A stretch of DNA of 64,000 nucleotides from Iphione sp. A-MEVVRFRX5. Taxonomy: Eukaryota. Made by a program: the position numbers and the translations under genes. The stretch spans positions 29,698,001 through 29,762,000 of the forward strand of contig OZ320313.1 in NCBI GenBank assembly GCA_976226885.1, read 5' to 3'. Position 1 is the first letter of the stretch. The number at the start of each line of letters is the position of its first letter. Under the pieces are notes generated by a model that was not told where the DNA came from, ran no database searches, and saw only the letters and a program-made list of their open reading frames with translations. Of this stretch, positions 5,300-57,261 are shown piece after piece.

Positions 5300-6800
5300 A
5301 GCCAGAGCTTGCCCTGCGTGTTAAGCCGACGGGTGCGATGGCCTTTCTCCTTCCCGGTGCACATCCTTCCTAGGGCTGCAAGCCAATGAGTCCATCTTAA
5401 CCGCCCGCACTGAGCATTGCGTACGACTTTCAGAGCCGGGCAGGCAGACCCACCATTAAGTGTCTGCAGAAGAGAGAGCAAGTGCAGGCCCTGATGTGTA
5501 TGGGGGCGGCTTGGTCCTAGCGTGGCGAACAGCTGGTGGCTTACCACACAGAGGCGTGATGCACAGCAGTGTCAGCCAGTGGTCGAGGACTTGGAAAGCG
5601 CACCGTATATCTCGCCCTCCCACTTGACGCCAGCCAGCACACGCCGCACTAAAGCCATCGCAGCCGCCACGTGTGTACTAGACGCAAGTCCGCCAGCGGT
5701 GCGCGCTGGCTCACTGGCTTGCTCGCTGACTGGCTCGCCTGCCTTGCCTGCTCCCCCTATGCCTGATGCGGATGTTGCGGCTCGCCGATAACTGAGAGAT
5801 TTCCGGCGGCGCACGAAGAAGTTGCTCTCACTTACCGGGATACGGTGTTTACTACCAGCCGCCGCCGCGTCTCAAGGTGGGTTGGCTATACAGGTGGACA
5901 TACAGGTGGGCAAAGGCTACGTCACGCTTGCGGCAACCGCCCTTAGGTGTATGCCGCCACCGCCGTCACCCGCTGTTGTTGCTGCTGCTCCGGTGAGCTG
6001 CTGCGGTGGCAGCCGGTGGGTTCTACCCTACCTACTGCCGTGATTGATGCCTCTACATACAGCAGAGCGTCATCCTCCGAGCTGGCCGCTCTCCTCCTGC
6101 TCCCTCTGACGTTCTCCTCCTCCTCCTCCTGCTCCTCCACGGCGGCGACGGGGAAGCAGCAACATTATTTCCGTCATCGTCTAGGCGACAAACAACGGCA
6201 GCGGGCATCAGCTATCGCGCAAAGGCCGTCATACTGTCAGACATACAACCACACACCGCAGGCCACTCACTCAGCACATCAGGATATCAAAAGGAACCAC
6301 CACCCTGGAAGCAGGTAGAGAACAAACGAAGCACCACTGCTAACGGGAAAGTCCGTACCTGCCTGTTGGCTTTCCTCAAGGATTTAGTCGTATGACTATT
6401 GAAAGATCTAGGAGTAGAGGGAGAGAGGAGGCACCGTGACAGCCCGATCACTTTAACATTACTGGCTTTCTTTCCCTTTCTTTTACCATCCAATCGGAGA
6501 ACTGTCGCTGCTCCGCATTTCACCCTGTACGCACACGTCGGCGCACTCAAACGCAGTGGCAGTCGAATGCTTCTCTCCGATTATGAGCGATAGATTTCAG
6601 CTCAATGCCAACCCCTAGGGTCGTCGAAAGCCGCCACGTCTGGACCCTGAGAGGTCCAGGGGTGTTCCTTCCACCCTTTCTCGGCGACGCGCTGCAACCC
6701 TTTCCACACAGGTAAGGTAGTCTCTCACCTGTGCGTTACCTCGCAGCGTTTATCGCCCTGGCGATTAGGAAAAAGCGATTGTAAAGATGGATCTAAAACT
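5300..6800. promoter_or_regulatory. CpG/GC-rich island; probable upstream promoter and 5' UTR region of the DGK locus
   Basis: Dense CG dinucleotides and GCC/GCT/TCC runs against AT-rich flanks, CCAAT near 5382, and splice donors on both strands. No convincing ATG-initiated long ORF. Confidence 0.5.
6605..6711 (+). CDS. Candidate alternative first coding exon of the DGK gene: MPTPRVVESRHVWTLRGPGVFLPPFLGDALQPFPH(R)
   Basis: ATG 6605, open frame, strong donor CAG|GTAAGG (GT at 6712), phase 2, in frame with exon 57153. It lies at the 3' edge of a CpG-rich island. No homology support. Confidence 0.5.
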
Positions 6801-9800
6801 CTCCATTAGAAATACCGTAATCTCCCTATTATCGTGGAGTTATGTAATTCATTCATACGTGATCTCCAAAATTATCATAATCATTAAATGTTCACATAAT
6901 TATTATTGTGAGGATAATCGATGGAATAAATGAATGAAGATGCAAGGGGCTGAAATGTGTGTGTACTGTGCTGTTAATACTAGACTGATGCTAGAATGAA
7001 GAGAGTCGGATATGGGAAAGGCAGCCATGGCTTGTTTTCTTTTTGTCAAGAGAGGGAGTGTGAACTGAACACATGATATTATTGACGTCTTTGCGGTGTA
7101 GTACAAACGATGTGAAATCCTATTCTCAGTTCTGTTTCTACGGGGGAAACAACATTTATTTCCATTTTACACGCACATGTAATTAAATAGACATTTGTGT
7201 CACACAGCTGCAGTGACAATAGATTCTGTCAACGTATTTTCTCTCCTCGCATCCGACTGCTTTTAAATAAAGAGGAAGACATTTTGATTTTATTATCACT
7301 CTCATTAGATCGTAATGTCCCCTTTACTGAAAGCAGAACTGGTCCTAATCATGATTATATCACAAGACGTTTATGACCTGGCCCTCTCTCGGACTGATGT
7401 TCTGAATGTAGGCCATACCCTTCAGTATCTAAACGCAGTTGGGGGCGGGGAGAGGACAGTCAGAGATGTTTTGATCCTTCGTCTGAACCTGCTGCATGCA
7501 CAACGTGCTCTCAAGCAGACACCGCGCGGGAGGACAGGAGGATAGCCTGCAGCAGAACCCTAAAATGAGCCCCTGCTGGGCAGTGGCTCGCGCGGGTGGC
7601 GTTGCGTTTGGATCCCGACTTTATTGGGACATGGTGCGCGCGTTGATCCTTTCTAGCTGAGAGCGTAACATCCTTTACATAATTAACCATCATCCCCGGC
7701 CAATGGGCTAGAATGACCAGAGCGCTCGTTAGTTAACACAGGAGTAGGCCACCAAAGGAGAGGGAGTCCCTTTTGACCCGTGTGCCTGTACCAATCTACA
7801 AGCGGGCTTCCAGCTGGGAGAAGACGACGTGGGTGCTCCTGTGGGAAATATGCCTGAGGGTCAGTGAATGCGTATGGCGCGCCGCTACCACAGAGACCCT
7901 GCGTCTCTCTGTCCGACGGTTCCCCCCCTCTTATAACTGCCGGCAACTGTAACTCTTGAGACATGATTTTTTACGCAAACGTCCGCTAGCAATACTCGAT
8001 AATTTGGGATCGTTCCGTGTGGTTTTGTCTCCTTATTAAGACGGATACCAGTGAAGCAGAACCTTGACAGACGTCATTTCAATGTCACACAGATGAAGTT
8101 AATTTAAGAGACAGGGGGCGGGCGTGATTACTCTGTGGGGAGACGCGATCTGACAGGCTTTGAAAGAGCTTTCAAAGATCCAAGAATGCACCACCACAGA
8201 GGTTTCTGCCGTTATTTGGTCGTCGTGACAAGTGCAGAGTAGCTCTTCCTTTAGAGCTGTAGATTTTCAGAATAGTTGAGGATGTACTATTAGCATTATC
8301 ATCCACACTTCTATATTAAGGCTGAATCTAATTACAAATGTACCTTTCCATTCACATATTCTAAGAAAGCTCTCTTTAGCTGCATGAACTGGTCCGTTGA
8401 AAAAACAATTCTGTGTAATGAACTGTGTGTATATACTTTTAAGTATTAGGATAACCTATCCTATTATATACGATCAGTCATCATACAAGTGAGACTAAAT
8501 AGGATAGATTATACATATGTGCTGATTGCCCGTTTAGTTGTCGTCTGCATGAGAGAAATCACCCGATGTAAATCGTTCGCACTAACAATACAGTATGACG
8601 GGACAGGATCTTTCATCGGAACCTTGTATCATTTTTAACTCGTCTACTGATCTTAAAGCCTTAGGAAGCCGTGCCAACATGTAAAAAAAAGAAAGAAACA
8701 AGAACGGAATTCTCAACGAGATTCGTCTCCTTTCCAGACTAACCGCCTGGCGCAACTTCTACGTGGCCTTTTGGGGCAGTCACGATAGCGTCTAAGTGAC
8801 GTTGCCTGCGCCTTGCAGTTGGAGGATGGCGCGAGCTGTGTTGAGCAGATTAGAGTACTTGCAGGTGCTCATCATTAGAGATGCTGAGGAAACTATTCAG
8901 ACTTCGGAACTTCTAGTCGATAAAGCTTCAGTTGCAGATTGTGCTTTTATTTCCCTTTTCCTCTCCATCCACCAAGTCATCCTAGACTTTCCACTTTAGC
9001 GCTGCTATGTGAACGTTTTTTGCTTTAATCTGTTAGTTCGCTGCCTTTTGTAGTCAAGGTTCTTCCTTCCCAACTTTTAAAAAATTAGCAGTTTGGCAAA
9101 ACACACCGGTATTATTTATCACTGACTGCCTGTTTTGACTATGTGACCTTCAAGACAAAATTCCAGCTCAAATGATATATTATGTCTACTGAGTTGATGC
9201 ATGACATCAAATCAAGAGCAGAGCTTGGGCAAAAATGCCTAATGCTCATTAAGGCACAATTGTTAGACGGCAAAGATGGCCACAATTAAGTTCTTCTGTG
9301 AAATACGATAAACGTTTAGCTGCAGATCTGTGCATCAGGGTTGCCTAAATCAGTGCTTAAATCTGCCTGACTTGTACAGTGCTGGGGATGTTGAATGCAG
9401 AATCTAATATAAGTAAAATAATGACATTTATCGGACCAATACTTTTTTGTTTAAGCTTAAAAGAAACATGATTTCGTCAGCTATTGAATTATTTTGCTCA
9501 ACTGCGATGGGCTCTCTAGCATCTGTGAGCCTCTTGTGAACACCTTGGTTGTAGGTAAATGCTGCAGCAGTATTGTCTAAGCATGCTGTATACAAGCTCT
9601 GGACATCATCTGGACAATGCCATGGGACACCCAGGATCATGGTCAGCCCATCCCCTTGGCTGCATCATATAGAGAGTTCTTTCCTCAGCTGATTGGGCGA
9701 TGTTGACATCATGTGATGACTTTATGTTGATGAGGGGCACGGGGATACATGTACTATGGGATGATTGCGGTGTCAGGACAAGAGCTGCTATAGGGGTCCT

Positions 9801-18219: not shown

Positions 18220-18541
18220 GGCCTAAAAAAAGTTCTGTTTCCGATAACAAGCTAAAAATTTAGAGGTTTGATTGGTAGTTGGCATTTTTATATTTTTCTT
18301 TTTTTCCCAATGTTAATTGCCTCTCAGAGTAACAAATGTATATAGTAAGATCAGTTCTACTGCTTAGATTATATACCAAATGAAAGCTAATAATGAGAAC
18401 AACAAAATGATGTATAGTATATGTCTCTATCAGCTTTCATTCCAAAGATACGCACAAAACAAGAAAAAAATTAAACATTTCCATTGGTACTAAAATCAGG
18501 GTTGGTCGGGTTACCGGAGACAAATATTTTTTGTTTACACC
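18220..18541. mobile_element. Degenerate PIF/Harbinger-type MITE
   Basis: Left end GGCCTAAAAAAAGTTCTGTTTCCGATAAC; right end GGGTTACCGGAGACAAATATTTTTTGTTTACACC (imperfect inverted repeat). TTA on both flanks (18217-18219, 18542-18544). Ends resemble those of the 59632 element. Confidence 0.5.
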
Positions 18542-19411: not shown

Positions 19412-19462
19412 GTGTGTGTGTCTTTGTGTGTGTGTGTGTGTGTTTGTATGTGTATGTTTGTG
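19412..19462. repeat. Imperfect (TG)n upstream of the long DGK first exon
   Basis: Directly visible. Confidence 0.9.
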
Positions 19463-19607
19463 TGCCCCCCCACGAGAGGTGTGTGCATTTGTACGGACTT
19501 GATCCGCTTATTGTACCTGCAAGTATCGCTAATCTATACTTATCGACTTTTGAACCTTTTCATTCCCCGCACCTTCTGACTACGGTTCGCTCCACATTCA
19601 AGCATAC

Positions 19608-20884
19608 ATGGTTGCCTCGAACTCCAAGATGAACCTATTCAAGAAAGCCCGCTCGCGCTCACCGTCTTTCGACATTCCGAAGCTGTGTCTGTCCCGACAG
19701 AAGAGGACAGAAGTGCCGCCCACCGAGGCAAGCTCCAGCCAGGTCGACCCAAGTGGTGCGGCTGTCGCGGCAGGCACAGACCCGGGAACGTGCAACGACG
19801 ATGGTGCCGGCACCCTCCATCCTCCCACCTCCCCAGGTGCTGGCGGCAGCGGCGGCGTCGTCGGCGGCGGCGACAGCGATGCCGGGGGCGCCGCAGCTCC
19901 GTCCACTGGGGTCGTGGGCTGCGCCGGCGGCGTCGGTGGCGGAGTCGGTGGCGACGCGTCATCGTCTGGCGCAGGCGCCGGCACCGGCGGCGTGGGATCG
20001 TCGGCGTCGGTGAGCAGTGCCAGCCCAGCCAGTAGCAACGGCTCGGGCGGCCAGCTGGACGAGCGGCAGCGGCGGCGGCGGCGAGTCCCGGCCTCGAACA
20101 GTCTGGAGGTGCCGCACCTGCCGCGTATCCGGTCGTCGAGCTTTGACACGAGCACCTTGCACCACGAGGAGCAGGTCGCGGCCGACAACACTCTAGTCGT
20201 TCCCGAGGCCAGCTCCTACCGCTCCAAGTCGTTCGATGCCTCCTACAGCTCGGAGGAATACGTGTCGGACCGCGAGTCGTCGTCGTCCATCTTTCTAGCG
20301 CTGCCCAAGTATTACCGGCGCCGCTCGCTGGAGATCCCTCGCTTGTGTATCCACTGCGTACACCTTGAGGCGCTCTCTAGCCAGGAGAACACACCCACCT
20401 CGCCAGGCGGCAACAAGTTCGATCTAAACCGCATCAACAATTTCGCCTACGACTCGCTGGATGACTTCAGCAGCGACGACGACGATGACGACGAGGACGA
20501 TGAGGACTACGATGACGGTGGCGGTGCCGGTGGTAGCGGTGCTGGAAGCGGCGGCAGCGGAGGAAGCGGAAGTGCGGGAATGTGCGGCGTGAAGGTGTCG
20601 CTCACCCCGCCGCCCGATCCGTACGGGGCGCTGTCCCTGAGACCGAGCGAGGACCAGGGGTGCAGCGTGGTGACGTTGGCCGTGCCCATGTGGAAGCCGC
20701 GTTCCTCATCCGTCGACGCCGCCTACATGCAGGTCGGCCCCGTTTGCGACGAACGACGCGGCTCCTTTGACCCTGGAATGCTGGACGTGCCCAAACAGCC
20801 GCGCTCCTCATCAGTCGACGTAACGCTGCCCACCCCCGAGTCGTCACACTATAAGGCCATCACGAGTACCAAGGCTGAGGACAG
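19608..20884 (+). CDS. DGKZ/DGKI (rdgA): Diacylglycerol kinase type IV (zeta/iota, rdgA-like): long first coding exon encoding a disordered N-terminal extension
   Basis: 426-codon GC-rich ORF from ATG 19608 ending at donor AG|GTAAAT (GT at 20885), phase 2. It joins exon 57153 in frame (GAC AG+G AAA = D-R-K). Motifs NSLEVP, RSSSFD, RSKSFD, CIHCVHLE, RSSSVD and VTLPTPESSHYKAI parallel the Drosophila rdgA N-terminus as I recall it (NSLEVP, RSASFD, RSHSFD, CIHCHYLE, RSRSVDIVLPT..ARYKAL). Confidence 0.92.
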
Positions 20885-25431: not shown

Positions 25432-25448
25432 CTCTCTCTCTCTCTTCT

Positions 25449-25496
<48 letters not shown>
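25432..25496. repeat. (CT)n microsatellite
   Basis: Directly visible, slightly interrupted. Confidence 0.98.
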
Positions 25497-25501
<5 letters not shown>

Positions 25502-27540: not shown

Positions 27541-27567
27541 GCTCAGATGCTACATGGCCACTAAGAC

Positions 27568-27579
27568 GAGAGAGAGAGG

Positions 27580-27636
<57 letters not shown>
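27568..27636. repeat. (AG)n microsatellite followed by a G-rich tract and (TG)n
   Basis: Directly visible. Confidence 0.98.
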
Positions 27637-27642
<6 letters not shown>

Positions 27643-30600
27643 AGAGGTAGGGAGAGAGGGAGGGAGGGGGACTCTGTGTGTGTGTGTCTGTGTGTGGTAT
27701 ATGTGCGTTTGTGTGTGTCGAGAGGTCTTAGAAGAAGTGCAGCGGTGTGGGGTCATGCTGATCAAGTAAAGGGTGATGAGGGTAGACACGAAAGGAGTAC
27801 TATGCTAAGGATATATGGGTCGATATTTTGCTCTCGATGTTTTTTTCCTTTTCATCCCTTGACTGCCTGTCCTTAATGGGCCCTCAAAAGACACTTTTCA
27901 CCCAAATGTCCTCCCAGATCTACAATGCTACTATGCCTATCGAAATGAAAGTAGCCCCATAGTTTTAGTTACGATATCAGTCCAGCAACCTTGCCAAGGA
28001 TTAGAATAGTCAGGACCGAAGTTCCTGTGAGGGACTGGTCCAATGTTTGTGGGTGTTAAAACACAAGATGATTCACAGGCAGATCTAACGCGATGTGATA
28101 TCGACGGATGTAACCTCAGCGAGGCATGCACCTCCAGTGAGGCGTGTAACGCGGGAAAGCTATGTTCTATATATACGCGCTGCCCCAACGACCGCGTCTA
28201 ATATATCTTTTAAGACCTGCCCACAAAACTTCCTTATCTACCTTCCCGCTAGGGGGGCTTGCTGTTCGGAACCCGCACTAATTAATGTAGGCGGCCTTGC
28301 CGCATGGCCTTGCAGTGAGGCGTTCACCGACGCACCTTCAGAGCATGAGATATTCGCCGTAATTTTCACACATGATGGCCCCAGGCCCTAGGCGGGCTAT
28401 TAACTTGCTTCCAGTGACAGTATTATGGGCACGCCAAGTGAGGCGCCGCCACTTGAGGGGCCACCTCACCATCAGAGAGGTCACACCGGCCTTCGTTTCT
28501 GTATGACCGTGTCGCAGTAGACCAGTTTACCAGGTCTTGATGGTTCTGCGCTGAAAAAAACACCCGCATGCGTTTCGTTTCGCACATCCGCGCCGATTAG
28601 GCCTGGTATGTATCTCCCAAGAAACGCAGTGTGAGCAGCTCCTCTTAGAGTGATGTCTTCATAAATGCTCTGCTGTAGACCAGCTAGGCTTAAAGACCCA
28701 TGCTCACATTAGTGTTTCGCGTAGGCTAGCGCAGTATTGAGTAAAACACGTTATTCGTCTCTGCAGTGAGTCCGTGAGAGTGTACATATACTTTATTTAA
28801 TTGATACTACTGGTAAGTCAGCCATTATTAAGGCGGTTTTTTCCTTGTTCAACTTGATTTCTTTGGTTAAAAGTAGCCGCAACGTGAAATGTACTGGAGC
28901 CTAACCATATGTCCGCTCATAATGCATGCGACTAGATCATGACAGCTAGTGGGTTGATTTCAACACCAGTGGTTCATAGGCTCCTTATTTAGGCTCCACA
29001 AGGCAGATACTGTCATCTGTAATGTGCATTAAGCCTGATATTTCCATGACCCCGTGTTTGCATGTCGGTGGTGCATTTTTGAAACAGAGAGACCATATTT
29101 CTTTGCTTAGAACGTACTCTAATCAAAGCAGTACAGATTCCATGTTGTCAGAGCAGAAAAGGGCGACGAAATGGCGCATACATTGACACTAAAGCTTAGG
29201 CTTCCTTTTTTAGTCAATCAATCTGCCTTTTCAGACCTAAGCATATGGCGTTTCTTTGTAGGATAAACTGATGGTGCCACTGAATAGTTGCAAACACATA
29301 CAAGGGCAGTAAACCTTGAACATTTGAAACGTTCTCCTCTAGAAACTGGAAAGAATGTTTGTATGATCCATTTTAATGTGCATGTATACCAACCTGTCCA
29401 ATGTTCAAAACCACAAAGCCTTTTTATTTATCGAAGTTAAGTCGATGGTATTTCCTGCTTAGGGAGAGCCGAAAAATGTTCATTATACAGCGAAGAGCAT
29501 TTCGTCTACTAGGGAGAAAAGTAAGATATTGGCACTTTGTGTCCGCCGTTCAGTGCTATTGGTAACGTCATCGTTCAACAGGACTATTTTCAGACCGCAG
29601 TTTTATGATACGGTTTACAGTATTGCGCTTAATGTCACGTGCTTTAGTTTCGAGGACCTTTTAGCTTTGTGTACCGTCCTCCAATGGCTGTTCAAGGTGG
29701 TCGTCTATCTTTCAAGCCTGACAAATTCAAATACGCAAAAGCGCTCCTGTTACATGGCCAAGAACCACGCCAAGGCCTCCCTGCAAGGATTATTTATTGA
29801 TTTTACAGAACTTAACAGATAAGACGCGATAACCGCGCCCAAAACATTGCCAGGTCTTAATCAATGGCGTATTTTGGAGAGTCCTAAGCCAACTGAAAGT
29901 CAAATATGCAAAGATTTATTTCGGGAAACCTTGTCGATACTTTTTGTTCGCCTGGAGAGCAACAATATCATGAGTTAAACCGTGACTGTTCTTGTTGTTG
30001 TGCCCGAATATGCCTAACTTGCAGACAAATATGACTCGCGGAGAGAATCCTGTCCCTAATCTAAACCTCAGGAAATGATTTCCAAATGCAGTGCTAATTG
30101 TAGAGACGTTCCTCAGATATTAATGCTGGGCCATTCCCCTCCGGAGGGTGATGGACGTTATTAAGGTGACCTTTCTCAGTCATCGCCATTCCAGACACTG
30201 AGCAGTTTGCACCAGATCCGCAGCAGCTGACGCTGTCGTCGCCGCTTCTATTAACGACAATATTTGAGAGACGGATGAGGAAGGAAGATTGGATAGATGG
30301 CTTCCTGAGTTGGGAAGGGTAGCAGCAAGTATAGTATGTCGTGCTCTAAATTCATGCTTCTTCGATAGTTTGAAATATGTTATATACAATATTCTCCGTG
30401 TCGGGAAGCAGAATGAATTTTTCATTCGGCACAGCCCCCAACTGTTACCTCAGTGATACCCAAGGTAGACTCAGCTAAATAAATGTCCAAACACGAGTCT
30501 TTTGCATAGACTTGCACTTTATCAATTTAGGAAAGGTTCCGTCACCACTTGCTGCCCATTTTGTCGTTACTGGTAGCAACCACAGAATTGTCGATACTGT

Positions 30601-33245: not shown

Positions 33246-33343
33246 ATGAGTAGACACAGACATGTCAGGCACACGCGGGAAGGTTCACACGATGCTGGAA
33301 GAGAAGGCGGGGCAGAGGGTCAGATGCGTGGGTTTTTGACAAG
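33246..33343 (+). CDS. Candidate alternative first coding exon: MSRHRHVRHTREGSHDAGREGGAEGQMRGFLT(R)
   Basis: ATG 33246 (GCAATGA), donor AAG|GTATGA (GT at 33344), phase 2, in a local GC/CpG-rich patch (about 32700-33340). Confidence 0.45.
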
Positions 33344-35249: not shown

Positions 35250-35434
35250 ATGCCCGCTCCCCACCTCCGCAAGGCTTCCTATCATGCTCTGGACGTTGCC
35301 ATCGACAGGAAGCAGCCATCAGCTACTTCCGGTGATCAGGCGGATGCGGATATGACGGCAGGAACCAGACGACCACCCCGGCTGCTGGACTTTGGCCGAG
35401 GAAAAGAAAGGGGAGCGATCGAAAGAGACATAGA
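35250..35434 (+). CDS. Candidate alternative first coding exon: MPAPHLRKASYHALDVAIDRKQPSATSGDQADADMTAGTRRPPRLLDFGRGKERGAIERDI(E)
   Basis: GCCATGC start, 61 open codons, donor GA|GTAAGT (GT at 35435), phase 2. GC-rich against AT-rich flanks. Confidence 0.5.
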
Positions 35435-37908
35435 GTAAGTGCGTAGGAGAGTATGAAGGAGTATCTGAGTATCGGAGGGACTCAAGGAGTGACAGACAGA
35501 GAAAAGACGCAACGCTGGAAGATTCTGACTCCATTTTCATGCAATGGTTTATTCATATATAGTGGATCACCGGGGATTTAATCCAAATACATGTAATTTG
35601 AATACGCTGTAGTCTCCTTAGTACAATGTACATGTATATGTAACCGGAATGCTGTTGTGTACACAGAGGAAACACTAATGCACAGCACAACAGTGAATAT
35701 AATCGTTGGACTAACCTTGAAGGCGGATGGTTGATATCCTGATATGGTTTGAACGCATTGTAGAGGTCGAAGAAGCTCAATAAAATGTTCTCTTTATGTC
35801 GCCATTCAACAAAACTACTTGTATGTTGTTCATATTGGCAATTGTCATCCCTCGCTTTTCTCACAACTTCCATATCAGAAAAAATGTTCAAATGTGAGGC
35901 TTAATCATGAGCATTGGGGGCCTTGACAGCTCTAAGTGGTCATAAAAACGTCGCCTGGTTAGAGTGTCGATGTTTGTACTCGTCATGGGCCACTGTCCCT
36001 TCGACGTTGATGTCACCCTAACAGATCCAGTTGTATGTTCATGCATCACCACGTACATTAGTGCTTCATACTTTCGCTTTACTAATGGGAGTCGGGTCCA
36101 GATGTTCTGATATCTTGTATGGATTTTGTATATATGTGTGTTCCGTTGACTTGAAGTTTATGTTCGCAAACACAAATATTCGTATAAACAAATATAACTA
36201 TATAAAAACGCAACTGATGACAGATACCTTAGGGTATGGAGGCGGGATGGTAACTGGACGTTTTTCTGAGCCCGGAAGGACTGTATATGAAATTACTTAT
36301 GTAAAATATATGTACCCATTCTTGAGGGGAATGTTTATTTGAATATTTTACTGCAGTCGAGCAAACCCAAACAAGCTTAGGGACATGCAATCCTGTTCCC
36401 TCCCCTACACTTCAAAGATTCAAGCACTTCTGAAAAAACAGTTCCAACTATATAGCTCGTGTAGAGAGGAGCAGACACTCCATGTTTATTCAGCGAGCAG
36501 AAATGTTCAACACACTCCTACCAAACGACGCCATTGTCCTTTTGATATCCTGATACAATTTGAGAAAAGCGAATGCTGCCAGTATATGTTAGCGAGCGCA
36601 GGTCTCATGAGCCTCAAGCCCCTTTCACAGCACTCATGTCACATACGACCGTCTAAAAGTGTTGTTACATAACTGCACTGTTGACTGCATCAATGTGTGG
36701 CGGGCATCGAATATCGTTCTCGCCATCGCTGAAGGGCCACGCGTCTACCACAGTTACCACGGGTCTCATTTATCGTAGTGGTTCATAGTCTGTTGGCATC
36801 GAACGTAACGTTTGTTCAGCCATATAATACAGTAGCCAGCCGTGGGCGATAATAGGTTCATATCGAGCGCTGCAGCTGGAGCTATCGAACATAATGGGTC
36901 ACGAGCGCGCTATGAGCTGCTCATGTCCAGATGTATTCAGTGTTTACCCCGGTCATTTAACCTCGCAGCGTTCTGGCGAGCATGCCATCCATAAAGCTAT
37001 GCCGCAATACGATATCTTGACGTGGAGGTTTTCTTTTACCGAGCTGTCAGATTGCTCTCAGCAGCCATCTGAATATCAGCAGTCATCCGACTTAACCACC
37101 GTGGAAAGCTCGCTCAACTTCAAGCAGTGAATGGTTTATGTGGATGGCGTCCATTAGTCAAAGTTTTGCAGCTGCCCTGCCAGCCTTCATCTACATGAAG
37201 GGTCATATATTTAAGTTGAGTTAGTAACCACAATAAAAAGTTAACAGATATATTGCATTCAGTTAACATACACTCAGTCTAAAGCAGTACCAAGATATAC
37301 CAGATATTTCCCTGTTGTGTGCTTATTGATATCTCTTATTGGTAATGCTTTCTGAATGTCAGTATTTTAAGTCGTCTTCACGATTTGCCTTTTGCCTTTT
37401 GTAGTGACCAAACGCATACATGGAACTGCATGTGAATGTGGCTTGAATTGTAATATGTTAATCGTATTTACCCGTTTACCTGTCTACCCATGCACTTTGT
37501 TTAACCACCAACTACCTAGCCATTGTGAAATGATGTTGATTTTGGATCATGTTTTATCACCATTCAATTGCATGAAGTCTTAAAAGTTTCACACCTTTTA
37601 GACTGAATTACATCCATTTGTTTATGATATCACGGCCTACATAATGCTTGAACCGATTAATTTGCAGTTACCCGCAAGAGTAGCCAGTTCGTTCGATGCA
37701 AAACCATTTAAATTTGCAGCCAATGTTGCCTCATTTCTAGTATTTAAGGTCGATGATATGCTATATATTCACCCCATGGCCCACAAATAATAATAAGAAT
37801 TGAGTCACCTTTACCTAATTGTTTTGTGTTTCCCTTTGCTTTTGACAAAAAAACTTACAGCAATGTAAGAATTTTGATGCCAGTTGCCTGTTGTTGTCCG
37901 TGTTATAG

Positions 37909-37971
37909 TGCTCGTTACCCTACCGGCCGTCGTAACTCCCTCTCGGATTCGACCCGCCTGCTCACCGACGG
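37909..37971 (+). CDS. Candidate 63-nt symmetric (phase 2-2) cassette exon: ARYPTGRRNSLSDSTRLLTD(G)
   Basis: Acceptor TTGCCTGTTGTTGTCCGTGTTATAG (AG 37907-37908), donor GG|GTAAGT (37972). Length 1+60+2, open in the required frame, and codons mostly end in C/G. Confidence 0.55.
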
Positions 37972-40900
37972 GTAAGTAGATAAGCCGCTTGCTGCTGCTT
38001 GGTGGGCGGGGAGTTGCTCGAGGGGTGCACGTGAGGGTTCCACTATCCTTTGCCTACACCCCACAACCTCCCCCCTGTTCTTGTTCCTTCACTGCACGGG
38101 TGATTCTCGCTCGACACTGAACGTTGACGAGGCGATGATTGGCCCACCGGCAGGTCAGCGCCTAAGTGTACTACTTGGAGACCTTAGCTCATATATACCA
38201 CTAATCACTTTGGGGTCTTTTTACCCTCAGGTCACGAAGCCTTTAGGTCGTAAAAGTTAGGTATCTTGTGTCACCTATTGCAAGAGCATGTCTCACGGAA
38301 TCCTATTGAGTAAGATGTTCCAGTTCTGCTCAAATACATTGTCCTGACTTCATCCCATTTTTAATTTCTCTTCACAATGAATGCTGGAAGAGGTCATGAT
38401 AAATGTACATGTACATGTACTTGATTTACGGTGTCCACATCAAACGTTCTGTTATAAGGCTAATAAAAGGGCAACAATGTTTACGTCTGAAATATTATGT
38501 ATGTTTGACAAAGTATTCGCTTTTCGGTTCTCGTAAAAGCAGAATGCCATTACGGTGAATTTATTACTTTGGAAGATTACAAGACTATGATTTCCCCATT
38601 TATAGTGACACTTTACAATGAGTACGAAAGCTTCTAATTTTGAATTCATTCCCCTGGTAGGGAGGTTGAGCCTGGTCCCTGGTAAGAGACGAAGAATTTT
38701 TTCTTTCTGTGTGGAAGAATATTGAATTTAAGGACAACTTCAGATTTTGAGTAGTATATAAATGTGACTTGCATATCATTTTTCCAGAAGTAGATTTGTC
38801 TTAAGTCTCCGAATTACATTTTAAAAGAGAATACTTATATTAGTGAGCTTTGCCTCTGGGTGTGTACATCGGAGCTGAGTGACAATTATAGACTGTGGGA
38901 TGGTGTCTGACATTTCCTTAATTTCTATTGCCTTTGCAATAATTCATCTCTGACCCTTTTTTGAAGTCAGCAGGATGCAAAATATTGGAATTAGTTGTAA
39001 TATTATCGATTGATTTTTAAATTAAATGAGTATAATGTATTCGAAATATGTAATGAGAATAATAATGTGGTAATATGCCTTAATTATAAGTTCGAACGTA
39101 ATCCTGCAAGTGTGATTTCATAGAAAGAGTAAACGTGCTATGTGCACCCTGTCTACTACTATTCATAACCATTAGTTTAACGTCTTCTCACTTCATGTGA
39201 GCAACTAATATTTGTGTGAAAACTAACAAACTTGATCCACATAGTTTTAGAAGTTTCTTTTTCTGAGAATCCACCCACGTTTATGTCATCAAATAATGAA
39301 TACCTCATTTTTCTCATTGACGCAAAAATGCTTTAGATGTATATAGTTATGAATAAACGGAACAGTCAAAGTGCCAATCATATTGGTCAAGATGTTAATG
39401 ATTTGGTGGCGCTTTTGTGTAACTTGATATAGTTCATACAAGCATCATTGTACAATGTACTTCAATGGCTTATACATAATTTATAAATTCTTTGTGACGG
39501 AAATGCCGAACCCAACGCAAGAGACTGGTTGTTATCGTGGACGACAATGATGACAACTCGTGATTTATTTCTTTGGACAGGACCTGTTATTTCTTTAATG
39601 CTTGACGTATTGTTACAGCACAAGACTCAGCAGATTCGGAAAATCACGGAAATCTGTGTACATCCCAAGGTAGGCCCATACCGTATTGAATTAACATTGT
39701 GCTGACTTACCAACGAGGTGGCCGGTTCCTTTTTTTCCCCATGGATCTCTCTGATTACGCCTCATTCGATTCACTCTGTCACGGCATGGTCTTCTACTCC
39801 AGCAGAAAGATCAGAATAATACATAAACACAATTACTTCTCGTCCCCAAGAAACCGCATGTGATTTAGGTAGGTTCGCAATGACTTGTAGTCAGAGACAG
39901 CGGAGTAGTCTCCTGTAATTAACCACTGTGTGGGGTGGGGAGATGCGGGCATTTCCTCAATCGGACGTCTGCAGCAGTTGATGTCCCCTTTTTGCTGCTG
40001 CTGCTGCGCCGCCGCTTACCAGGGAAGGGCCTTTTTTCTTGTACAAGAGAAGGAACACTTGTTTGTCTGTATATTCGCATATGCTAGCAGAGAATCATAA
40101 GATGTTTGTTCTATCTTTCCTGCCTTTCTTGTTATCGGCCGTTTTTCACCTGATTTCCTCATCAACTTACACTTTACCATCACTCAAGTGGATGTCAGAC
40201 GTTGGTCTTACGGTTTTACGTTTTGCTCGTCCAAACTGCTTCGTGTAGTATTCTATATATGTTTGTAATATACATCACGCGTAGCAGATACATGTATATA
40301 CTGCGGTGCGCATTACACTTATAGGAAAACATCTTTCCTTTTACTGTTGAATTCACTTTTTTACCGACCGCTTTATTGTTATAAACCAGCCTAACGGGTT
40401 GTCGTGGGTTCCTGTTATGCAAGAATGATACATTTCCCCAGTGTATACACTGTCATAAGGCCAGCTATATTTTGGACTCTTATTATTGATCGGTAGTGCA
40501 CCAGGTGGCGACCAATTTCCATCGGGGTATACAAGTAAGCTGCGTCTGTAGCCGACACCAGTCAATGCTGGACGCCTTGAGGTCGAAAATTTAATTCGTT
40601 CTCGCTCCATATATTCTGGCCCCAGTTCATGACAGGAAAGCTGTAATAGAAGGTATTCACAATCACTCCCAAAGACGTAATATTCCACAATTTTCTGAAA
40701 TATATGAAATATAGTTGCAAAGCTCCAGGTCATAAGACCTTGGCGATACAAGGATTTGTGAATTATATAGACGAGATTCAGTTTGATCCAGACGTTCTGA
40801 TATTAACAAAGAGAGAGAATATGAATCTCCTTTTCTCCTAGTATCCTCATGGTGTTTTCCCAATATACTAAATTTCAATTTCACGTTTATTTTCCTCAGC

Positions 40901-43671: not shown

Positions 43672-43742
43672 ATGGCTGCATATATGCTACTACAAATGGC
43701 TTGCGTAGGCGTGGGTGGCTTCTGGTGGCTTGATGCTGCAGT
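43672..43742 (+). CDS. Candidate alternative first coding exon with hydrophobic peptide: MAAYMLLQMACVGVGGFWWLDAA(V)
   Basis: Strong start context AGCATGG, donor GT|GTAAGT (GT at 43743), phase 2, followed by CpG-rich sequence. Confidence 0.4.
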
Positions 43743-46700: not shown

Positions 46701-47570
46701 ACCCACACTTAACGGGAAGCTGCCCTGTAATTCACCCATGTTGTCGCCATTTGATTCAAGGCTTCAATCTCTTCGTTATTGATCAGGTGCTCTTTATCGG
46801 CGCGTCGGTTCCCTTTTTTCGCTTTATCTCGAAGTCGTTGAAAAGCAGCTGGTGTGAATAATACAGATCGATACCTGGCGTGGCGTAAACACCGTAAATT
46901 GCCTCTGTTAAGGCTGTGGGCGATGCCAACAGACGGGTTGGGGGTGGGGGGGGGGGGGCAGCCGGTGAAGCCGAAAGAGGGATAGCGTTTCTCAAGATGT
47001 TTGTGATCAGTGGTGCGCGATGTTGGAGACTCGGCGAGGGATGAAGAGGACGGGGACGCGCTGGGTGTGAAGGGACAGTGATAAGGGGCTGTGGGAGAAG
47101 AGTGGGGTAGCAGACAAGAACAACAAAAGGAAACTGGAACGTAAATGTCTCCAAGGTAGAGACGAACAGAGGAGGGGGCGGACTAAGCAGAAAAAAAATC
47201 GACAGAATTAAAGTTACATGTACATGATTGCCCACTACAAGGCAGCACGATAGTTTAAGTTTTAAAAAAACAGGAGTTATGCACGAACTTTGGTGAAGTC
47301 CGAAGGGGTATCCGAGGAAGATAAAACGTAGACACGTAAAGAGGTATTCTAAAGGTACATTCGGGGAGAAGCAGAGTGCTTTAAATATGCAAAGAATTCA
47401 CGCAGATATACATGTATTCCCGTTTATCATCCACTTGGAGCCTTCTACGTAGAAACAACAGCCGGTAAGAAATTCAGCTTGGCATGATAAAAAAAGAAGG
47501 GGGGGAGGCAAAAGAATTTAAGTAATGAGCACTTCGCTTGTGGCACATGCTAACTTTATACTGTGCAGGC

Positions 47571-47701
47571 ATGTTGAACGTGAAAACGTGGACGTTTGGC
47601 ACGCGTCCTGATGACAGATTTGTACGAAGCCCGCCAGACAAGTCGTGTGCCTGTAAACCTCATGTGACGCAAGTGGCGCCGCCCTGCAGTATCCGTCTCT
47701 T
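47571..47701 (+). CDS. Candidate alternative first coding exon: MLNVKTWTFGTRPDDRFVRSPPDKSCACKPHVTQVAPPCSIRL(L)
   Basis: Preceded by a well-formed 104-nt intron (GTAAGA 47465, CTAAC 47550-47554, AG 47567-47568). Ends at TT|GTGAGC (GT at 47702), phase 2. Confidence 0.3.
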
Positions 47702-50700: not shown

Positions 50701-50983
50701 ATGTTTTGCCTCCCTCCGTGCAGAGGTCGGTTGATTAATCTGTATCTCGACAATATTCGTTGGTCTTCATCGGGTCGTATAGACAGGCACGCACAGATAT
50801 AAAATATACATGTGCATACATATAGGAAAAATATATGAGACGTCTCCACTTAACCTCAGGAAGAACGCGATAGATTCCTTATGTACATGGACATATATTA
50901 CAGAGTCACTAAGAGGGGCACATTTCAATTAGGGACAATGCGACCAAGAACCAAGGGTGCCCCTAATATGGGCTTTCCACTGT

Positions 50984-51008
50984 ATATATATATATATATA
51001 TATATATA
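50984..51008. repeat. (TA)n microsatellite
   Basis: Directly visible. Confidence 0.95.
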
Positions 51009-52345: not shown

Positions 52346-52939
52346 AGTTGTCCCCCGCCTCATAGAGGGGGGGACATTAGGAATGCTGCCAGCTGGTGTC
52401 CCGACCATCCGTCACACTCTTGTGGGTCTTATACGTCTGAAACCCTTCACTCAAAAAAACAGATTTTAATATATGATATTGGTATATATAGCCCCATGGC
52501 ACTGGGTAATTTAGGTAGTAATTCAAATATTTTGAAGGTGAAATTATGCCAATTTTACTCTTTTCCTAACACACCTACAAACATACATACCTGGTTCAGG
52601 AGTTCCTAGGTCTGACAATGCACATACATACACACTCAGTGCTCAGTCATGCAGAACCGAGGGTTTGTGGCAGTCTGGTGCTCAGTGAGGCAGAACCGAG
52701 GGGACTGTGTCTGGTCAGGCAGAACCGAGAGTTGTAAACCTGAAGGACTTAAACAAGTCTAGCCAACTACCCCCAAAACAAGCTGGCAATCAAGGTGGTT
52801 GTAAGGAGAGAGAGACACTACACACACAGACACACACACACACACATTTTCTCTCTCTTTCTCTCCCCTTCTCCCCCCCCCCAATCTTTATGGGCAGTTG
52901 ATGGCGGGGGACAATAGACCTCACAGGTCCACACTCTTG
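52346..52939 (+). mobile_element. HINE/DINE-1-like non-autonomous Helentron element nested in the LINE
   Basis: 5' subterminal repeat TTGTCCCCCGCC (52348-52359) with a nearby inverted copy forming a hairpin (52349-52376), then a degenerate GTCC-type microsatellite. The 3' inverted subTIR GGCGGGGGACAA (52903-52914) is followed by the stem-loop GACCT-CAC-AGGTC (52917-52929) and a T-rich flank. Confidence 0.7.
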
Positions 52940-54129
52940 TTTTCTTTAAATTTCTCTGTATCTGATTAATATTTGCCAGTCCATAACTTTCCACACCTTT
53001 AATAAATTTAGGCAAATCATTTGTAAAAGAAATAGTTCAGGCAAAATCTGGTAAACATTATGAAACACAAATTATTGTTTAAACTGCAAGGTTATCTAAT
53101 AAATTAGTAATTACCAGGTGTACTCCCCCACATTTTCTGATCCCAAATTGCTCATCACAAAGTAATGATTGATTGTCCTTTAGATAATACACAATTACGT
53201 TGTTCCATCACCTTTGCATATACCGATAAGTGAATAATAGGCCTATATTTTTGCAATTCGCCCTTACTTCCACCTTTGTCAATAGGTGTGATTTCATTGT
53301 CAATAAGCTGTCATTATAAATAGGTAATGATTCATACGTCATATCCAATAGTATTTCTTTAACCGTACTCATTGGAATATCTAAGAACTTGGATGATTTA
53401 TTTTTATGCAGGGAAGCCATAGCATTGCAACATTCTTCAATACTGAAAGGTGGTACCGACTAACATTTCAATATCATAACCGTCATAAGAAACTGTTTCA
53501 GTTATTGCTGTTGACCCTGGGAGGCTCTTGAGGACAATGTCAATGAAAACATCGTTGAATTTCTCTACAGTTTCTTTATCGCTGATTTTTTAATTCTCCC
53601 TGTCTGCTAAAATAGGCTTCTCACAATGACTACCAAATCCCAGCTCCTCACCAAGGTGCTGCCAAAAGCGTTTTGGATTACAGACATCCAAGTCTGCTCT
53701 GTTCAGAATGTATGATCTCTTTGCTTTAACAACTGCCTTTTTACTCTGTACCTAGCTGTCTTTGAAATTAATTTATCATATAGGTTTCCTGATTTTTTAT
53801 ATCTAGCCATTACTTCTATCACGTCTTTTAGTCATAAGTGAACCTACGTAACTATACCACCCGGGTGAATTTTTACTAATTATCTTACATGTTCCTGGTT
53901 ATCATCCCAGGCATCATTAGCGTTGATTTGAGATTGACACTGTTATACTTCATCGATATTACCAGCTGCTTCAATCATAGTACATGTTCTATGGTCAATA
54001 CTGAACCTGGCTTTCTCCCACTAATAACATTGTTCATTTCATTTCATTTCATTGTATCTTTTACCAGGAATATATTCACCTATCATATGACAGGGATCTT
54101 CCATATCCTCCTGGGGTAGCATACTACCA

Positions 54130-54380
54130 TCTATTGTTGAGAATTGAGAGACCAGAATACCTGGGGTTGCTCCCTACTCTTATTTCGAATAGGTTTCTAG
54201 GGTCTTTTTGTGTATAGGGGACAGAATTCTATACACCCACAGCCTTTTTACGAGTTGTGGACCACTCTGGGTTGGGGCTACAGTAAATCTGTCTGGTCAT
54301 GATCAGGAGTCCCAGGCCCGGGATTGAACCTGTGACCTCTCAGTCAGTGGACCAGTGCTCTACCACTGAGCTAACTCCCC
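54130..54380 (-). mobile_element. tRNA-derived SINE
   Basis: Pol III A box TAGCTCAGTGG (54363-54373) and B box GGTTCAATCCC (54320-54330) in a tRNA-like head with poor anticodon and T stems, followed by a non-tRNA body. The 3' boundary is approximate. Confidence 0.75.
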
Positions 54381-57152
54381 ACCCTAGCAGCAGAGGAGAA
54401 TACCTTATTCTCCCTCTCAGTCTGACAGAGATGGAGATTAAACAATGAAGATAACAACCATCTAATGTAAATCTGAATTTTATCATCTTTTTTAATCTCA
54501 CGGTTGTCTGCGGAGAGACTTTACTAATATGTCACTTTATCTGAATTAACTCAGATTTTACTCTCCTTTTTCTCATGGACTCATTTTTGTAAATACACAA
54601 ATTTAGACCATTCAACTGTGATTTTTGTTTCAGACTTTCTACGACAAGGTCGTAACGTACCAGCTTCACCATGAGAATCTTTCTTCATTCGATAAATGCT
54701 ATCAATGCCTTCCATTTTCATTGGTACAGCGATTGAACCACAAATCGAGATGATCACCTGCAAAACCATATCTGGCCCATCTTGGAAGCCTGGACCATAA
54801 AAAATAATAGACTTTTGTCTATTTCATGTAGTATTTGAAGACAACACAGGTTTCCTATAATATCGTTCACTCCAACAGAGTTAGTCGAAAATATGCCCAA
54901 AACCACGGTATAAAGGCAACGAGTATCAATTTTATGTAATCTACAACAGTTTAGCCAACATTTCCTATGCTTATTTACCAATACCGACTCATTAAAACGC
55001 AACCCTACCGCAGTGCAGATGCTTTCTTACGCGTGCTGCACTCAATGCATGCCTGCGCAATGTTTCTATAGCATTTCATTTATGTCCATGTCCATATTTT
55101 TTTTAATTTGCTGTTCGTTGTTGCCATGGTCCTTAGGCTTCTGTAGGAGAGCTGAATTGTGATTGGTCAGTCTGGAGGTTTAGTAAAGCGGGCGACATTC
55201 AAAGGCCTGGCGGGGTGCGGACGTAGGCGGGTGGGTGATTGCGAGACTGCGGGGTAGACCTGTGCCTTGTGATTTGCCGTTCTGTAAATAGTCTGGCACG
55301 AGTGTGCATAGCGGTCACCAGACTGCATCATCCTCGCTGCCCCCACGCATTCCATCATCCCTTGTCGCTTCCAATAATCCTGGCACTGGCCCTGACGACC
55401 GCTTGACCTTGTCACCTCCACTGAATACGGCGGTTTGGACACTGCTACCGTACATCTGACCTTGGTCATTGAGCTCATGTTTCCTCCTGTTAGGCTTTAT
55501 TGTGTACGTCCTCAGGTCAGTATATGAGAAATATCTTGTGGCCGAGTTTTCCGATATTGAGCGTCACTTCCGCTGATGGTCGAGATAATACCGCCTCGAT
55601 TTCAACTTTTCAGGGCAGGTAGTTTAACAGTATTTAACCCTGACATCCTAACCCTGAATAATCAGTGAATTTATTGACTCCCTTAAATTAACTTGGGTAT
55701 TTAAAACGAATTTCCGTTCCAAAAAACGCGTTTTTTGCAGGTTTTATAAGGTTACTCAATGTAACGCTGTCATGTAGTGTTCCAAAGACCACTTTTAATG
55801 GGGATTATTACCTCAGTGTCACGCTGTGAAGTGATGGTTAGTCGCCCATCAAGCTGTTCATTGTCACAACATTTCCAAACCGAAATACATGTACATGCAC
55901 TTGCTAGATTCCTCCTGTGACTAACGATATCAATAGAACACCAACATTGGATTGGCACCTATCAGAATATTCTTTTGGTTTTGTTCTAAGTTTATCATAA
56001 TCATAATCATTCGCGATTTAGAGTCTGTAGCGTTTGTAATGTTTGAAATGCCAGTGTTGGTATGTAACTGTTGATGCTGTTATATAGGCCTACATGTGTG
56101 TATGGCCTTGAATTTTGCCTATATTTAATTATCTTTGTATATAGAACCTAATGTTTGAGTAACCCGTTACTTCGAGATTTTATATTATATTCAATGCGTT
56201 ATAGGTGTATGGTCCTGTTAGAGTGTCTTCTTTAGGTAGATTGTACTTTCAGTATTCAGTATATACAGCAATAGAAATATATGTTATAGCAGGTACAGTC
56301 AGAGATCCCCTTGCATGTACAACAGGGACCCATCGCTAAAGGCCTGTACGTGTAAAATTTAGATATTCATTGTAACTATAATGGAAGGCAAAGCCAGGGA
56401 CCGCATTTAACACCACTGTAGCATAGAAAGTGGTAGTGTCAACGATCCTCGTAGTCACAATGAGTAGAGAGCTACATTGGCTGGGAATTAACTGTTTAGA
56501 GCGCTTTTATGATGGCACTCGTCGCACGTTGTTTACCCATTTAAAATTTACATCTTTTTGCGTGTCTGTTCTGTGTATTTTCGTTATTCATATTCCCAGG
56601 GCTGCAACCATTTCATCGAGTGCCAGAATGAAGCTTTGCAATAAAACGCTAGCAACAAATAAAGTCGCTTGGGGAAAAAAACCCACCCTGCTTAAAGTTG
56701 TCAGTTTACCAGATCGGATTTTATAGCGCTCGTCAGTCAGATGTTCGTGGCTTTAATGAAGGGAGACATGACAAGAATTTGCTGCGTTCCCAGTTTGGCC
56801 AATTCGAGCGAGCTGTTGATTCTGTGTACCGTGTCGTACAAATAATGTTTGACAAGCAACTAATCAGGAGCTGACTTTTCATTCCTGTCCGACACATTCA
56901 TCAATTTAATGTATTTTATGATCATAAAATCATATGGTGAGGTTGACATGAACCATTGGGTTAATATGACAGGGGACTGTAACTAACTTAATGACTGGCC
57001 TATACCTCTGGAGCAATTGCATATTCTGAAAGACCACCGGTTGTATAGCCGTGCCCAAAAATACATCCCGCGCCGTCCGAGCTTTTTGTTCTTCATGTTT
57101 AAACAGATCATGAAATCGTTGTAGATTAATGTTTGCCTTTATCTTTTTTCAG

Positions 57153-57261
57153 GAAAGCCATCTCAAAAAGTTGTCAAGACAACAACGACCTGTTACATCC
57201 GCGCCATGCTGAAATCGGCTACACAAAAAAGAAGGAGATTCGATCCACCGTAGATTGGACG
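57153..57261 (+). CDS. DGKZ/DGKI (rdgA): DGK type IV common exon 2: (R)KAISKSCQDNNDLLHPRHAEIGYTKKKEIRSTVDWT
   Basis: Polypyrimidine tract + AG at 57151-57152; donor GTACGT at 57262; 109 nt, phase 2 to 0. RKAISKS...IRSTVDW matches DGKZ RKAITKS...IRSTVDW. Confidence 0.96.

What the first reader, a model, noticed from the sequence alone, without database searches (positions are those of the whole stretch)
6605..57261. Array of interchangeable N-terminal exons feeding one DGK core
The common exon at 57153 needs a phase-2 donor. Six ATG-initiated open frames upstream end at GT(A/G)AG/GTATGA-type donors in exactly that phase: 6711, 20884, 33343, 35434, 43742 and 47701. Each sits in a local GC/CpG patch. 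The predicted N-termini differ sharply: a 426-aa phospho-motif tail, a His/Arg-rich peptide, an RKAS-containing peptide, a hydrophobic peptide and a Cys-containing peptide. Alternative first exons at this junction are known in mammalian DGKZ, but a set this large would be a promoter-choice system for retargeting one lipid kinase. Caveat: I searched 50 kb by eye and phase agreement has a 1-in-3 chance, so some candidates are probably spurious.
Basis: partly seen in the sequence, partly recalled or inferred. Interest (0 to 1): 0.75.

Follow-up and report, generated by a model that had tools for sequence, protein, structure and literature searches.

The report
One real DGK N-terminal exon, five chance ORFs
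This window holds the front end of an ordinary worm-type diacylglycerol kinase (zeta/iota/rdgA class) gene. Only one of the six proposed alternative first exons is supported, the other five look like chance, and two small conserved cassette exons that this finding did not list sit in the same intron.

Summary
All six ATG-opened frames exist at the stated coordinates and end in phase 2 at GT donors. That is not more than chance. Composition-matched random sequence gives 11.5 +/- 3.5 phase-2 candidates.

The long exon 19608-20884 is real. It is conserved in annelids, molluscs and a nemertean, and more weakly in arthropod rdgA. RefSeq and other annotated models join it directly to the KAISKS exon.

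I walked 82.8 kb of the orthologous locus in a related annelid. None of the five short candidates is conserved there at DNA or protein level. The same comparison picks out two other intronic exons: 37909-37971 (63 nt) and 39619-39669 (51 nt). Both keep their splice sites and the phase-2 frame.

Alternative N-terminal exons at this junction are already annotated in bivalves and a nemertean, and are known for mammalian DGK zeta. No RNA run was listed, so species-specific first exons cannot be excluded.

Verdict: an ordinary gene, with the array unsupported as specified.

The parts
19602..20884 (+). Long N-terminal coding exon of the DGK zeta/iota/rdgA-type gene. The CDS starts at ATG 19608 and gives 425 codons plus 2 nt, ending at donor CAG|GTAAAT in phase 2. 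The exon probably starts at 19602, after a conserved AG.
   Evidence: It finds 48 homologues, the best at E=7e-118, from annelids and molluscs. Alignment A1 shows invariant LxVP, RSSSFD and IPxxCxHC blocks. Annotated proteins join this region directly to KAISKS. Similarity to arthropod rdgA N-termini is weak. DNA is conserved with two related annelid contigs, starting at 19593-19601, and the AG 5 nt before the ATG is present in all three.
37909..37971 (+). Conserved 63-nt in-frame internal exon, phase 2 in and phase 2 out, encoding ARYPTGRRNSLSDSTRLLTD. Probably a cassette.
   Evidence: blastn gives 77% identity over 110 nt to the collinear position in the relative's intron, E=2e-15. Acceptor TAG and donor GTAAGTAG are conserved. 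Codon changes are 10 synonymous against 3 non-synonymous, with 17/20 aa identical. tblastn E=4e-8. The upstream in-frame ATG at 37877 is not conserved.
39619..39669 (+). Conserved 51-nt in-frame internal exon, phase 2 in and phase 2 out, encoding TRLSRFGKSRKSVYIP. Probably a cassette, and faster evolving than the 63-nt exon.
   Evidence: blastn 75% over 69 nt, collinear, E=1e-5. The flanks TATTGTTACAG| and |GTAGGCC are identical in both species, the length is the same, and 8/16 aa are identical. tblastn E=5e-7.
57153..57261 (+). Common exon (KAISKS...RSTVDWT). The acceptor needs a phase-2 donor.
   Evidence: Sequence. It is 83% nt and 35/36 aa identical to the relative, with 17 synonymous codon changes. 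It aligns to DGK zeta-like proteins.
58716..58799 (+). Next coding exon (ESAINGDHIW...GESQCL), the start of the first C1 region.
   Evidence: tblastn to P0069 and P0073. Boundaries read from the sequence.
61788..61862 (+). Coding exon (KSGPRKKCAACKILIHTGC...).
   Evidence: tblastn and in-frame boundary test.
62984..63040 (+). Coding exon (INFKCKPTFREAGPRNYRE).
   Evidence: tblastn and sequence.
63384..63452 (+). Coding exon ([23 protein letters not shown]). The gene continues beyond the window.
   Evidence: tblastn gives 92% identity to the Owenia protein P0073. Sequence.
6605..6711 (+). It is an unsupported ORF plus GTAAGG donor, 13 kb upstream of the long exon.
   Evidence: The ORF and phase are confirmed. 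No conservation in 28.7 kb upstream of the relative's long exon, with best tblastn E=0.38. No Pfam match.
33246..33343 (+).
   Evidence: The ORF and phase are confirmed. No collinear DNA or protein match in the relative's intron. CpG o/e is unremarkable.
35250..35434 (+).
   Evidence: The exon side of the donor is AGA|GTAAGT.
43672..43742 (+).
47547..47701 (+).
   Evidence: Best tblastn E=0.17-0.44, not collinear.

Best explanation
The window is the 5' part of a single-copy spiralian (annelid-like) class IV diacylglycerol kinase gene, of the DGK zeta/iota/rdgA type.

Shown here:
- A long, disordered, phospho-motif-rich N-terminal exon (CDS 19608-20884) is ancient. Orthologues splice it in phase 2 onto the common KAISKS exon (57153-57261).
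- The 36-kb intron between these exons holds two small exons under purifying constraint (63 nt at 37909-37971, 51 nt at 39619-39669). Each preserves phase 2, so each can be included or skipped without changing the frame.
- The C1-domain exons follow at 58716-63452.

Inferred:
- The two small exons are cassette (alternative) exons that add Arg/Ser-rich stretches just before the kinase core.
- The long exon is not itself a transcription-start exon. A conserved AG 5 nt before its ATG suggests a 5'UTR or upstream exon splices into it.
For: Gene identity:
- The exon-2 to exon-6 translations align to DGK zeta-like proteins that carry C1, DAGK_cat, DAGK_acc, DGKI and Ank Pfam domains.

Long exon:
- E=7e-118 to a related annelid, with hits in Capitella, Ridgeia, Lamellibrachia, Lottia and Tegillarca.
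- It is joined directly to KAISKS in the Tegillarca, Gigantopelta, Haliotis, Mytilus, Ostrea, Octopus, Patella and Lineus models.

Chance level of the candidates:
-.

Conservation test across an 82.8-kb orthologous stretch:
- Neutral divergence is high, with 17 of 36 exon-2 codons changed synonymously.
- Only the long exon, the two microexons and the common exon are conserved and collinear by blastn and by six-frame tblastn.

Microexons:
- Both keep their AG and GT sites. The 63-nt exon has 10 synonymous against 3 non-synonymous codon changes.
- An analogous 17-aa insert at the same junction exists in Crassostrea gigas isoform X9.
Against: No transcript data could be obtained, since no RNA run was listed. 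Neither the junctions nor the alternative status of the microexons is shown for this species.

Only one relative covers the whole intron. The second covers about 20 kb downstream of the long exon.

Some alternative N-termini annotated in bivalves are short and were seen here in only one genus. Lack of conservation therefore does not prove a candidate is unused.

The 51-nt exon has 3 synonymous against 8 non-synonymous codon changes, so its coding constraint is weak.
Confidence: 0.8

Rival explanations
1. At least one of the five short candidates is a genuine, lineage-specific alternative first exon with its own promoter. In that case the gene would have a small promoter-choice array inside the window.
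For: Related phyla have several N-terminal exons at exactly this junction. Some of them are short peptides seen here in only one genus: Mytilus has five or more, oysters four, and Lineus three. All five candidates have a usable ATG, an open frame and a GT donor in the right phase. Candidate 6711 has a good donor (CAG|GTAAGG) and raised CpG.
Against: Their number is what chance gives. None is conserved in the orthologous locus, where real 51- to 109-nt exons are. None resembles any of 81 distinct N-termini from the fetched relatives. Four of the five lie in ordinary CpG context. The bivalve Cys-rich N-terminus is shared between Mytilus and another sequence, P0058, so a real exon can be conserved at comparable distances.
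Confidence: 0.15
2. The gene does use alternative N-terminal exons, but the partner of the long exon is the canonical short exon ending ...RKQTSYR, shared from vertebrate DGK iota to molluscs. That exon lies outside this window, probably upstream.
For: The ...F(S/T)I(R/K)KQTSYR exon precedes KAISKS in molluscs, echinoderms, hemichordates, amphioxus, a nemertean and fish DGK iota. It also does so in P0069, whose common exon is about 71% identical to this window's. In Dreissena isoform X3 the short exon lies 5' of sequence from the long N-terminal region. A conserved AG just before ATG 19608 suggests upstream exons exist.
Against: An HMM of 32 such exons finds nothing in the window, or in 82.8 kb of the relative, which includes 28.7 kb upstream of its long exon. 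The exon may therefore be far away or lost in this lineage. The conserved AG could also be part of a conserved start-codon context.
Confidence: 0.4
3. The two conserved intronic blocks are constitutive exons or conserved non-coding elements, not alternative cassettes.
For: Their alternative use is inferred only. Annotated models in other phyla mostly join the long exon directly to KAISKS, but gene predictors often miss microexons. The 51-nt block has more non-synonymous than synonymous changes.
Against: Both blocks are bounded by a conserved AG and GT, have equal length in both species, have lengths divisible by 3, and are open in the phase-2 frame in both. The 63-nt block shows a clear excess of synonymous changes.
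Confidence: 0.2

Closest known systems
Mammalian DGK zeta isoforms zeta1 and zeta2 (alternative exon 1)
   Same: A class IV DGK whose isoforms differ only at the N-terminus, through use or non-use of a first exon upstream of the KAITKS/C1 region. The two isoforms differ functionally: zeta1 but not zeta2 binds RasGRP1 (PMC3850743; PMC7555651).
   Different: The papers read here describe two variants. The long N-terminal exon here belongs to the protostome rdgA/spiralian type. I did not test it against the mammalian zeta2 extension.
RefSeq-annotated spiralian 'diacylglycerol kinase zeta-like' genes (Mytilus edulis, M. galloprovincialis, Crassostrea, Ostrea, Lineus longissimus)
   Same: The same long N-terminal exon (MN[IL]FKKSRSRSPSFEIPKLC...HYKAIT) is joined in the same place to KAISKS. 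Several further N-terminal exons and a 17-aa insert are annotated at that junction.
   Different: Those alternative N-termini have no counterpart in this window. They include MAECASIPS...KQTSYR, the Cys-rich ...CCMPFGCFR, and others. The two microexons found here have no sequence match among the fetched isoforms.
Arthropod retinal degeneration A (rdgA, eye-specific DGK)
   Same: A class IV DGK with a long N-terminal region. Weak but significant similarity to the exon here (E=1e-6 to 1e-4), covering the LEVP and RSSS-type blocks.
   Different: Identity is only about 30% over parts of the exon. Gene structure in arthropods was not examined.

Membership tests
Class IV diacylglycerol kinase (zeta/iota/rdgA) | N-terminal KAI(S/T)KS...STVDW segment followed by two C1 domains | tested here: met
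   Exons 57153-57261, 58716-58799, 61788-61862, 62984-63040 and 63384-63452 align at 62-92% identity to the annelid-like DGK sequences P0069 and P0073. The second C1 domain lies beyond the window.
Class IV diacylglycerol kinase (zeta/iota/rdgA) | Catalytic DAGK domain, MARCKS-homology site and C-terminal ankyrin repeats (PMC5567653) | not testable with these tools
   These parts of the gene lie downstream of position 64000. The homologues that match the window's exons carry DAGK_cat, DAGK_acc, DGKI and Ank Pfam domains.
Array of alternative first exons (promoter choice) at the KAISKS junction | Several ATG-containing exons, each ending at a phase-2 donor, in excess of chance | tested here: not met
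   There are 15 phase-2 candidates against 10 and 17 in the other phases. Random sequence gives 11.5 +/- 3.5.
Array of alternative first exons (promoter choice) at the KAISKS junction | Each exon conserved in related genomes or matching annotated N-termini | tested here: not met
   Met only for 19608-20884. The other five have no match in the relative's 82.8-kb locus or among 81 N-termini.
Array of alternative first exons (promoter choice) at the KAISKS junction | Transcripts joining each exon to 57153, with a start site upstream of each | not testable with these tools
   No RNA run was listed for this sequence, so no reads could be laid.
Frame-preserving cassette microexons | Conserved AG and GT, length divisible by 3, open in the host frame, coding-type substitution pattern | tested here: met
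   37909-37971 has all four features. 39619-39669 has the first three, but 3 synonymous against 8 non-synonymous changes.
Frame-preserving cassette microexons | Both inclusion and skipping seen in RNA | not testable with these tools
   No RNA run was listed.

The most novel reading that the evidence does not exclude
This annelid gene, like the Mytilus gene, really runs a multi-promoter array. In that reading one or more of the short unconserved frames (or others like them) would be young, species-specific first exons that give the kinase new N-terminal peptides.
Probability: 0.15. Interest if true: 0.4.

Novelty: new member of a known kind. Interest (0 to 1): 0.2.

Why it matters
It corrects the gene model. 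The locus has one conserved long N-terminal exon plus two conserved microexons before the common exon, not six interchangeable first exons. The long rdgA-type N-terminus is shared by annelids, molluscs and a nemertean, with weak similarity in arthropods. The microexons add Arg/Ser-rich peptides next to the C1 domains, so they are reasonable targets for isoform studies. None of this changes what is known about class IV DGKs, because N-terminal isoform diversity at this junction is already annotated in several phyla.

Tried and rejected
- RNA evidence: the look-up of sequencing runs on the long exon listed no RNA run, so read laying could not be used.
- Family scans: Pfam on all six N-terminal peptides and on ten intronic ORFs of at least 110 aa gave nothing, so no transposon explains the candidates.
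- Repeats: only microsatellites were found.
- Window 35853-35882 (RFSHNFHIRK) resembles the canonical ...FTIRKQTSYR exon at E=0.71. It continues NVQ, sits in AT-rich unconserved DNA and was rejected.
- Window 4237 (KQTSY) has no in-frame ATG and a poor donor, and was rejected.
- Window 2624-2704 against the relative (E=7e-4) is low-complexity noise.
- A weak match of the 51-nt exon in Lamellibrachia is chance.
- The walk along the second relative's contig stopped about 20 kb past its long exon. I did not try to get round that.
- The big representative search was not used. The candidates are 23-61 aa, only one query is allowed, and the verdict does not rest on database-wide absence.
Full report
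**What is at the coordinates**

The acceptor at 57153 (ttttcag|G AAA GCC...) opens a 109-nt exon encoding KAISKSCQDNNDLLHPRHAEIGYTKKKEIRSTVDWT, and it needs two bases from the upstream exon. Each has an ATG, an open frame and a GT two bases into a codon: 6605-6711, 19608-20884, 33246-33343, 35250-35434, 43672-43742 and 47547-47701. The window has no N runs.

**Is six more than chance?**

It gives 10 candidates in phase 0, 17 in phase 1 and 15 in phase 2.

With GTAAAT added, the + strand gives 10/18/20 and the - strand 16/8/9. One hundred first-order Markov simulations of the same stretch give 11.9, 12.2 and 11.5 per phase, with sd about 3.5. Several of the observed phase-2 cases lie inside the true long exon or at the 63-nt exon described below.

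The 'GC/CpG patch' claim holds for the long exon and for 6605-6711. It does not hold for the other four, whose CpG o/e lies at the 33rd to 66th percentile of 400-nt windows.

**Gene identity**

Downstream exons at 58716-58799, 61788-61862, 62984-63040 and 63384-63452 encode the start of the C1 region, including [18 protein letters not shown]. They align at 62-92% identity to the annelid-like DGK sequences P0069 and P0073.

The matching full-length proteins carry C1, DAGK_cat, DAGK_acc, DGKI and ankyrin Pfam domains. Their sources name them 'diacylglycerol kinase zeta-like' or 'eye-specific diacylglycerol kinase'. That places the gene in class IV of the family (PMC5567653). The catalytic and ankyrin parts lie beyond the window.

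**The long exon is real**

The 425-aa translation has no Pfam match. It does find 48 homologues: the best is at E=7e-118 (66% identity), and others come from Capitella, Ridgeia, Lamellibrachia, Lottia and Tegillarca. Alignment A1 shows invariant LxVP, RSSSFD, IPxxCxHC and RSSS-V-D blocks and a conserved start, MN(I/L)FKK.RSRSPSF.IPKLC.

In annotated proteins this region runs straight into KAISKS. This is seen in Tegillarca, Gigantopelta, and Haliotis, Mytilus, Ostrea, Crassostrea, Octopus, Patella, Argopecten and Lineus. It also has weak similarity to the long N-termini of arthropod rdgA proteins, at E=1e-6 to 1e-4. The 20884->57153 junction is therefore supported by orthology.

**Test by comparison with a relative**

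No protein in the database is identical to this exon, so the species itself is not represented. The best hit, P0001, lies on a 1.08-Mb contig of an ENA assembly. By stepping from one called ORF to the next, I assembled 82.8 kb of that contig. It covers 28.7 kb upstream of its long exon, the whole 51.5-kb intron, and the common exon.

Neutral divergence is high. In the common exon, 17 of 36 codons differ synonymously and only one differs non-synonymously. Introns do not align.

blastn with word size 9 finds only these collinear blocks:
- the long exon
- 37883-37991 (E=2e-15)
- 39608-39676 (E=1e-5)
- the common exon (E=6e-29)
- two very short elements noted below

A six-frame tblastn of every open stretch of at least 15 aa in the window gives the same four exons and nothing at any of the five short candidates. 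Direct tblastn of the candidate peptides gives best E-values of 0.17 to about 1, at non-collinear places. The 20-aa peptide of the 63-nt exon gives 1.6e-8 and the common exon 3.6e-22.

A second relative, covered to about 20 kb past its long exon, likewise conserves only the long exon.

**Two exons this finding did not list**

*37909-37971 (63 nt).* It follows a conserved ...TAG and precedes a conserved GTAAGTAG. In the phase-2 frame it encodes ARYPTGRRNSLSDSTRLLTD, against ARYPTGRRSSISDSTRLLND in the relative. Codon changes are 10 synonymous and 3 non-synonymous. An in-frame ATG at 37877, upstream of the acceptor, is not conserved. This is therefore an internal exon and not a first exon.

*39619-39669 (51 nt).* Its flanks TATTGTTACAG| and |GTAGGCC are identical in both species, and so is its length. 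It is open in phase 2 in both and encodes TRLSRFGKSRKSVYIP against TRINRFGKTRKTICGQ. Codon changes are 3 synonymous and 8 non-synonymous.

Both lengths are multiples of three, and both exons take and give phase 2. Any combination of these two exons with the long exon and the common exon therefore stays in frame. That they are alternative cassettes is an inference. An analogous 17-aa insert sits at the same junction in Crassostrea gigas isoform X9, and Pomacea and Lineus also have inserts there.

**What is known elsewhere**

Mammalian DGK zeta1 and zeta2 differ by use of exon 1 and differ in function (PMC3850743; PMC7555651).

In spiralians, RefSeq lists many isoforms: at least 48 for Mytilus edulis, 17 for Ostrea edulis and 12 for Lineus. 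Reading their N-termini shows several different peptides joined exactly before KAISKS:
- the long type
- a canonical short type ending ...F(S/T)I(R/K)KQTSYR, which is also the N-terminus of fish DGK iota and of echinoderm, hemichordate and amphioxus proteins
- a Cys-rich type, ...CCMPFGCFR
- others seen in single genera

None of those peptides has a counterpart in the window. tblastn with 81 distinct N-termini gave only two noise hits. An HMM of 32 canonical short exons gave nothing better than E=1.9 in the window or the relatives. Two look-alikes, at 35853 and 4237, were examined and rejected.

**Start of the long exon**

Conservation with both relatives begins at 19593-19601. All three species have AG five bases before the ATG, behind a pyrimidine-rich stretch. 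I read this as a 3' splice site at 19601|19602. If so, the long exon is not the transcription-start exon, and at least one upstream exon exists (5'UTR or the canonical short exon). This is inference. A conserved start-codon context would give the same picture.

**Limits**

- No RNA run was listed for the long exon. No junction in this species is shown directly.
- Only one relative spans the whole intron.
- Young first exons need not be conserved, so I leave about 15% for at least one of the five being used.
- The large representative search was not run, for the reasons given under Tried and rejected.

**Verdict**

This is an ordinary 5' region of a class IV DGK gene. One of the six proposed first exons is real and ancient. 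The other five are at chance level and unconserved. Two conserved in-frame microexons are the real extra content of the intron.

Noticed in passing
window 19590-19610: An AG five bases before ATG 19608, behind a pyrimidine-rich stretch, is present in this window and in two related annelid contigs. Conservation starts there. It is probably the acceptor of the long exon, which would imply an upstream exon.
   Followed up: partly
window 56692-56710: A 19-nt exact match (part of TTAAAGTTGTCAGTTTACC) to the collinear position in the relative's intron. It lies 0.46 kb upstream of the common exon here and 1.1 kb upstream there. It has no exon features and may be an intronic regulatory element.
   Followed up: partly
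window 8846-8881: A 36-nt block 83% identical to a site 21.9 kb upstream of the relative's long exon, with CAGATTAGAGTACTTG identical. E=0.009, so it is marginal.
   Followed up: partly
window 19608-20884, roughly codons 95-165: Alignment A1 shows a Gly/Ala/Ser-rich low-complexity stretch in this species that is much shorter or absent in all relatives. This is a lineage-specific expansion inside the conserved exon.
   Followed up: no
whole window and the 82.8-kb relative stretch (rel1): The canonical short N-terminal exon ending ...RKQTSYR was not found in either. It is shared by vertebrate DGK iota, echinoderms, molluscs and the annelid-like P0069. It must lie further upstream or be lost.
   Followed up: partly
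L012 (Lamellibrachia satsuma contig JAHXPS010002440.1): The deposited DGK zeta model starts at small exons 5.4 kb upstream of the common exon. The long N-terminal exon is annotated as a separate hypothetical protein (P0020) whose longest contig has the same length, 376,126 bp. The gene is probably split in that annotation.
   Followed up: partly
L011 305-832 and 1423-2859; L010 1-1042: Genes called on the ENA contig of the second relative contain in-frame TGA codons, some at 15-codon spacing, which marks a tandem repeat. These look like spurious calls made with a TGA-reading code on eukaryotic DNA.
   Followed up: partly
window 25432-25499 and 27568-27666: A (CT)n and a (GA)n microsatellite 2.1 kb apart form the only long inverted repeat in the window.
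   Followed up: no
L001 14696-15553: An ORF with a weak reverse-transcriptase (RVT_1) match lies in the relative's intron. It has no counterpart in this window and fits the relative's longer intron (51.5 against 36.3 kb).
   Followed up: no
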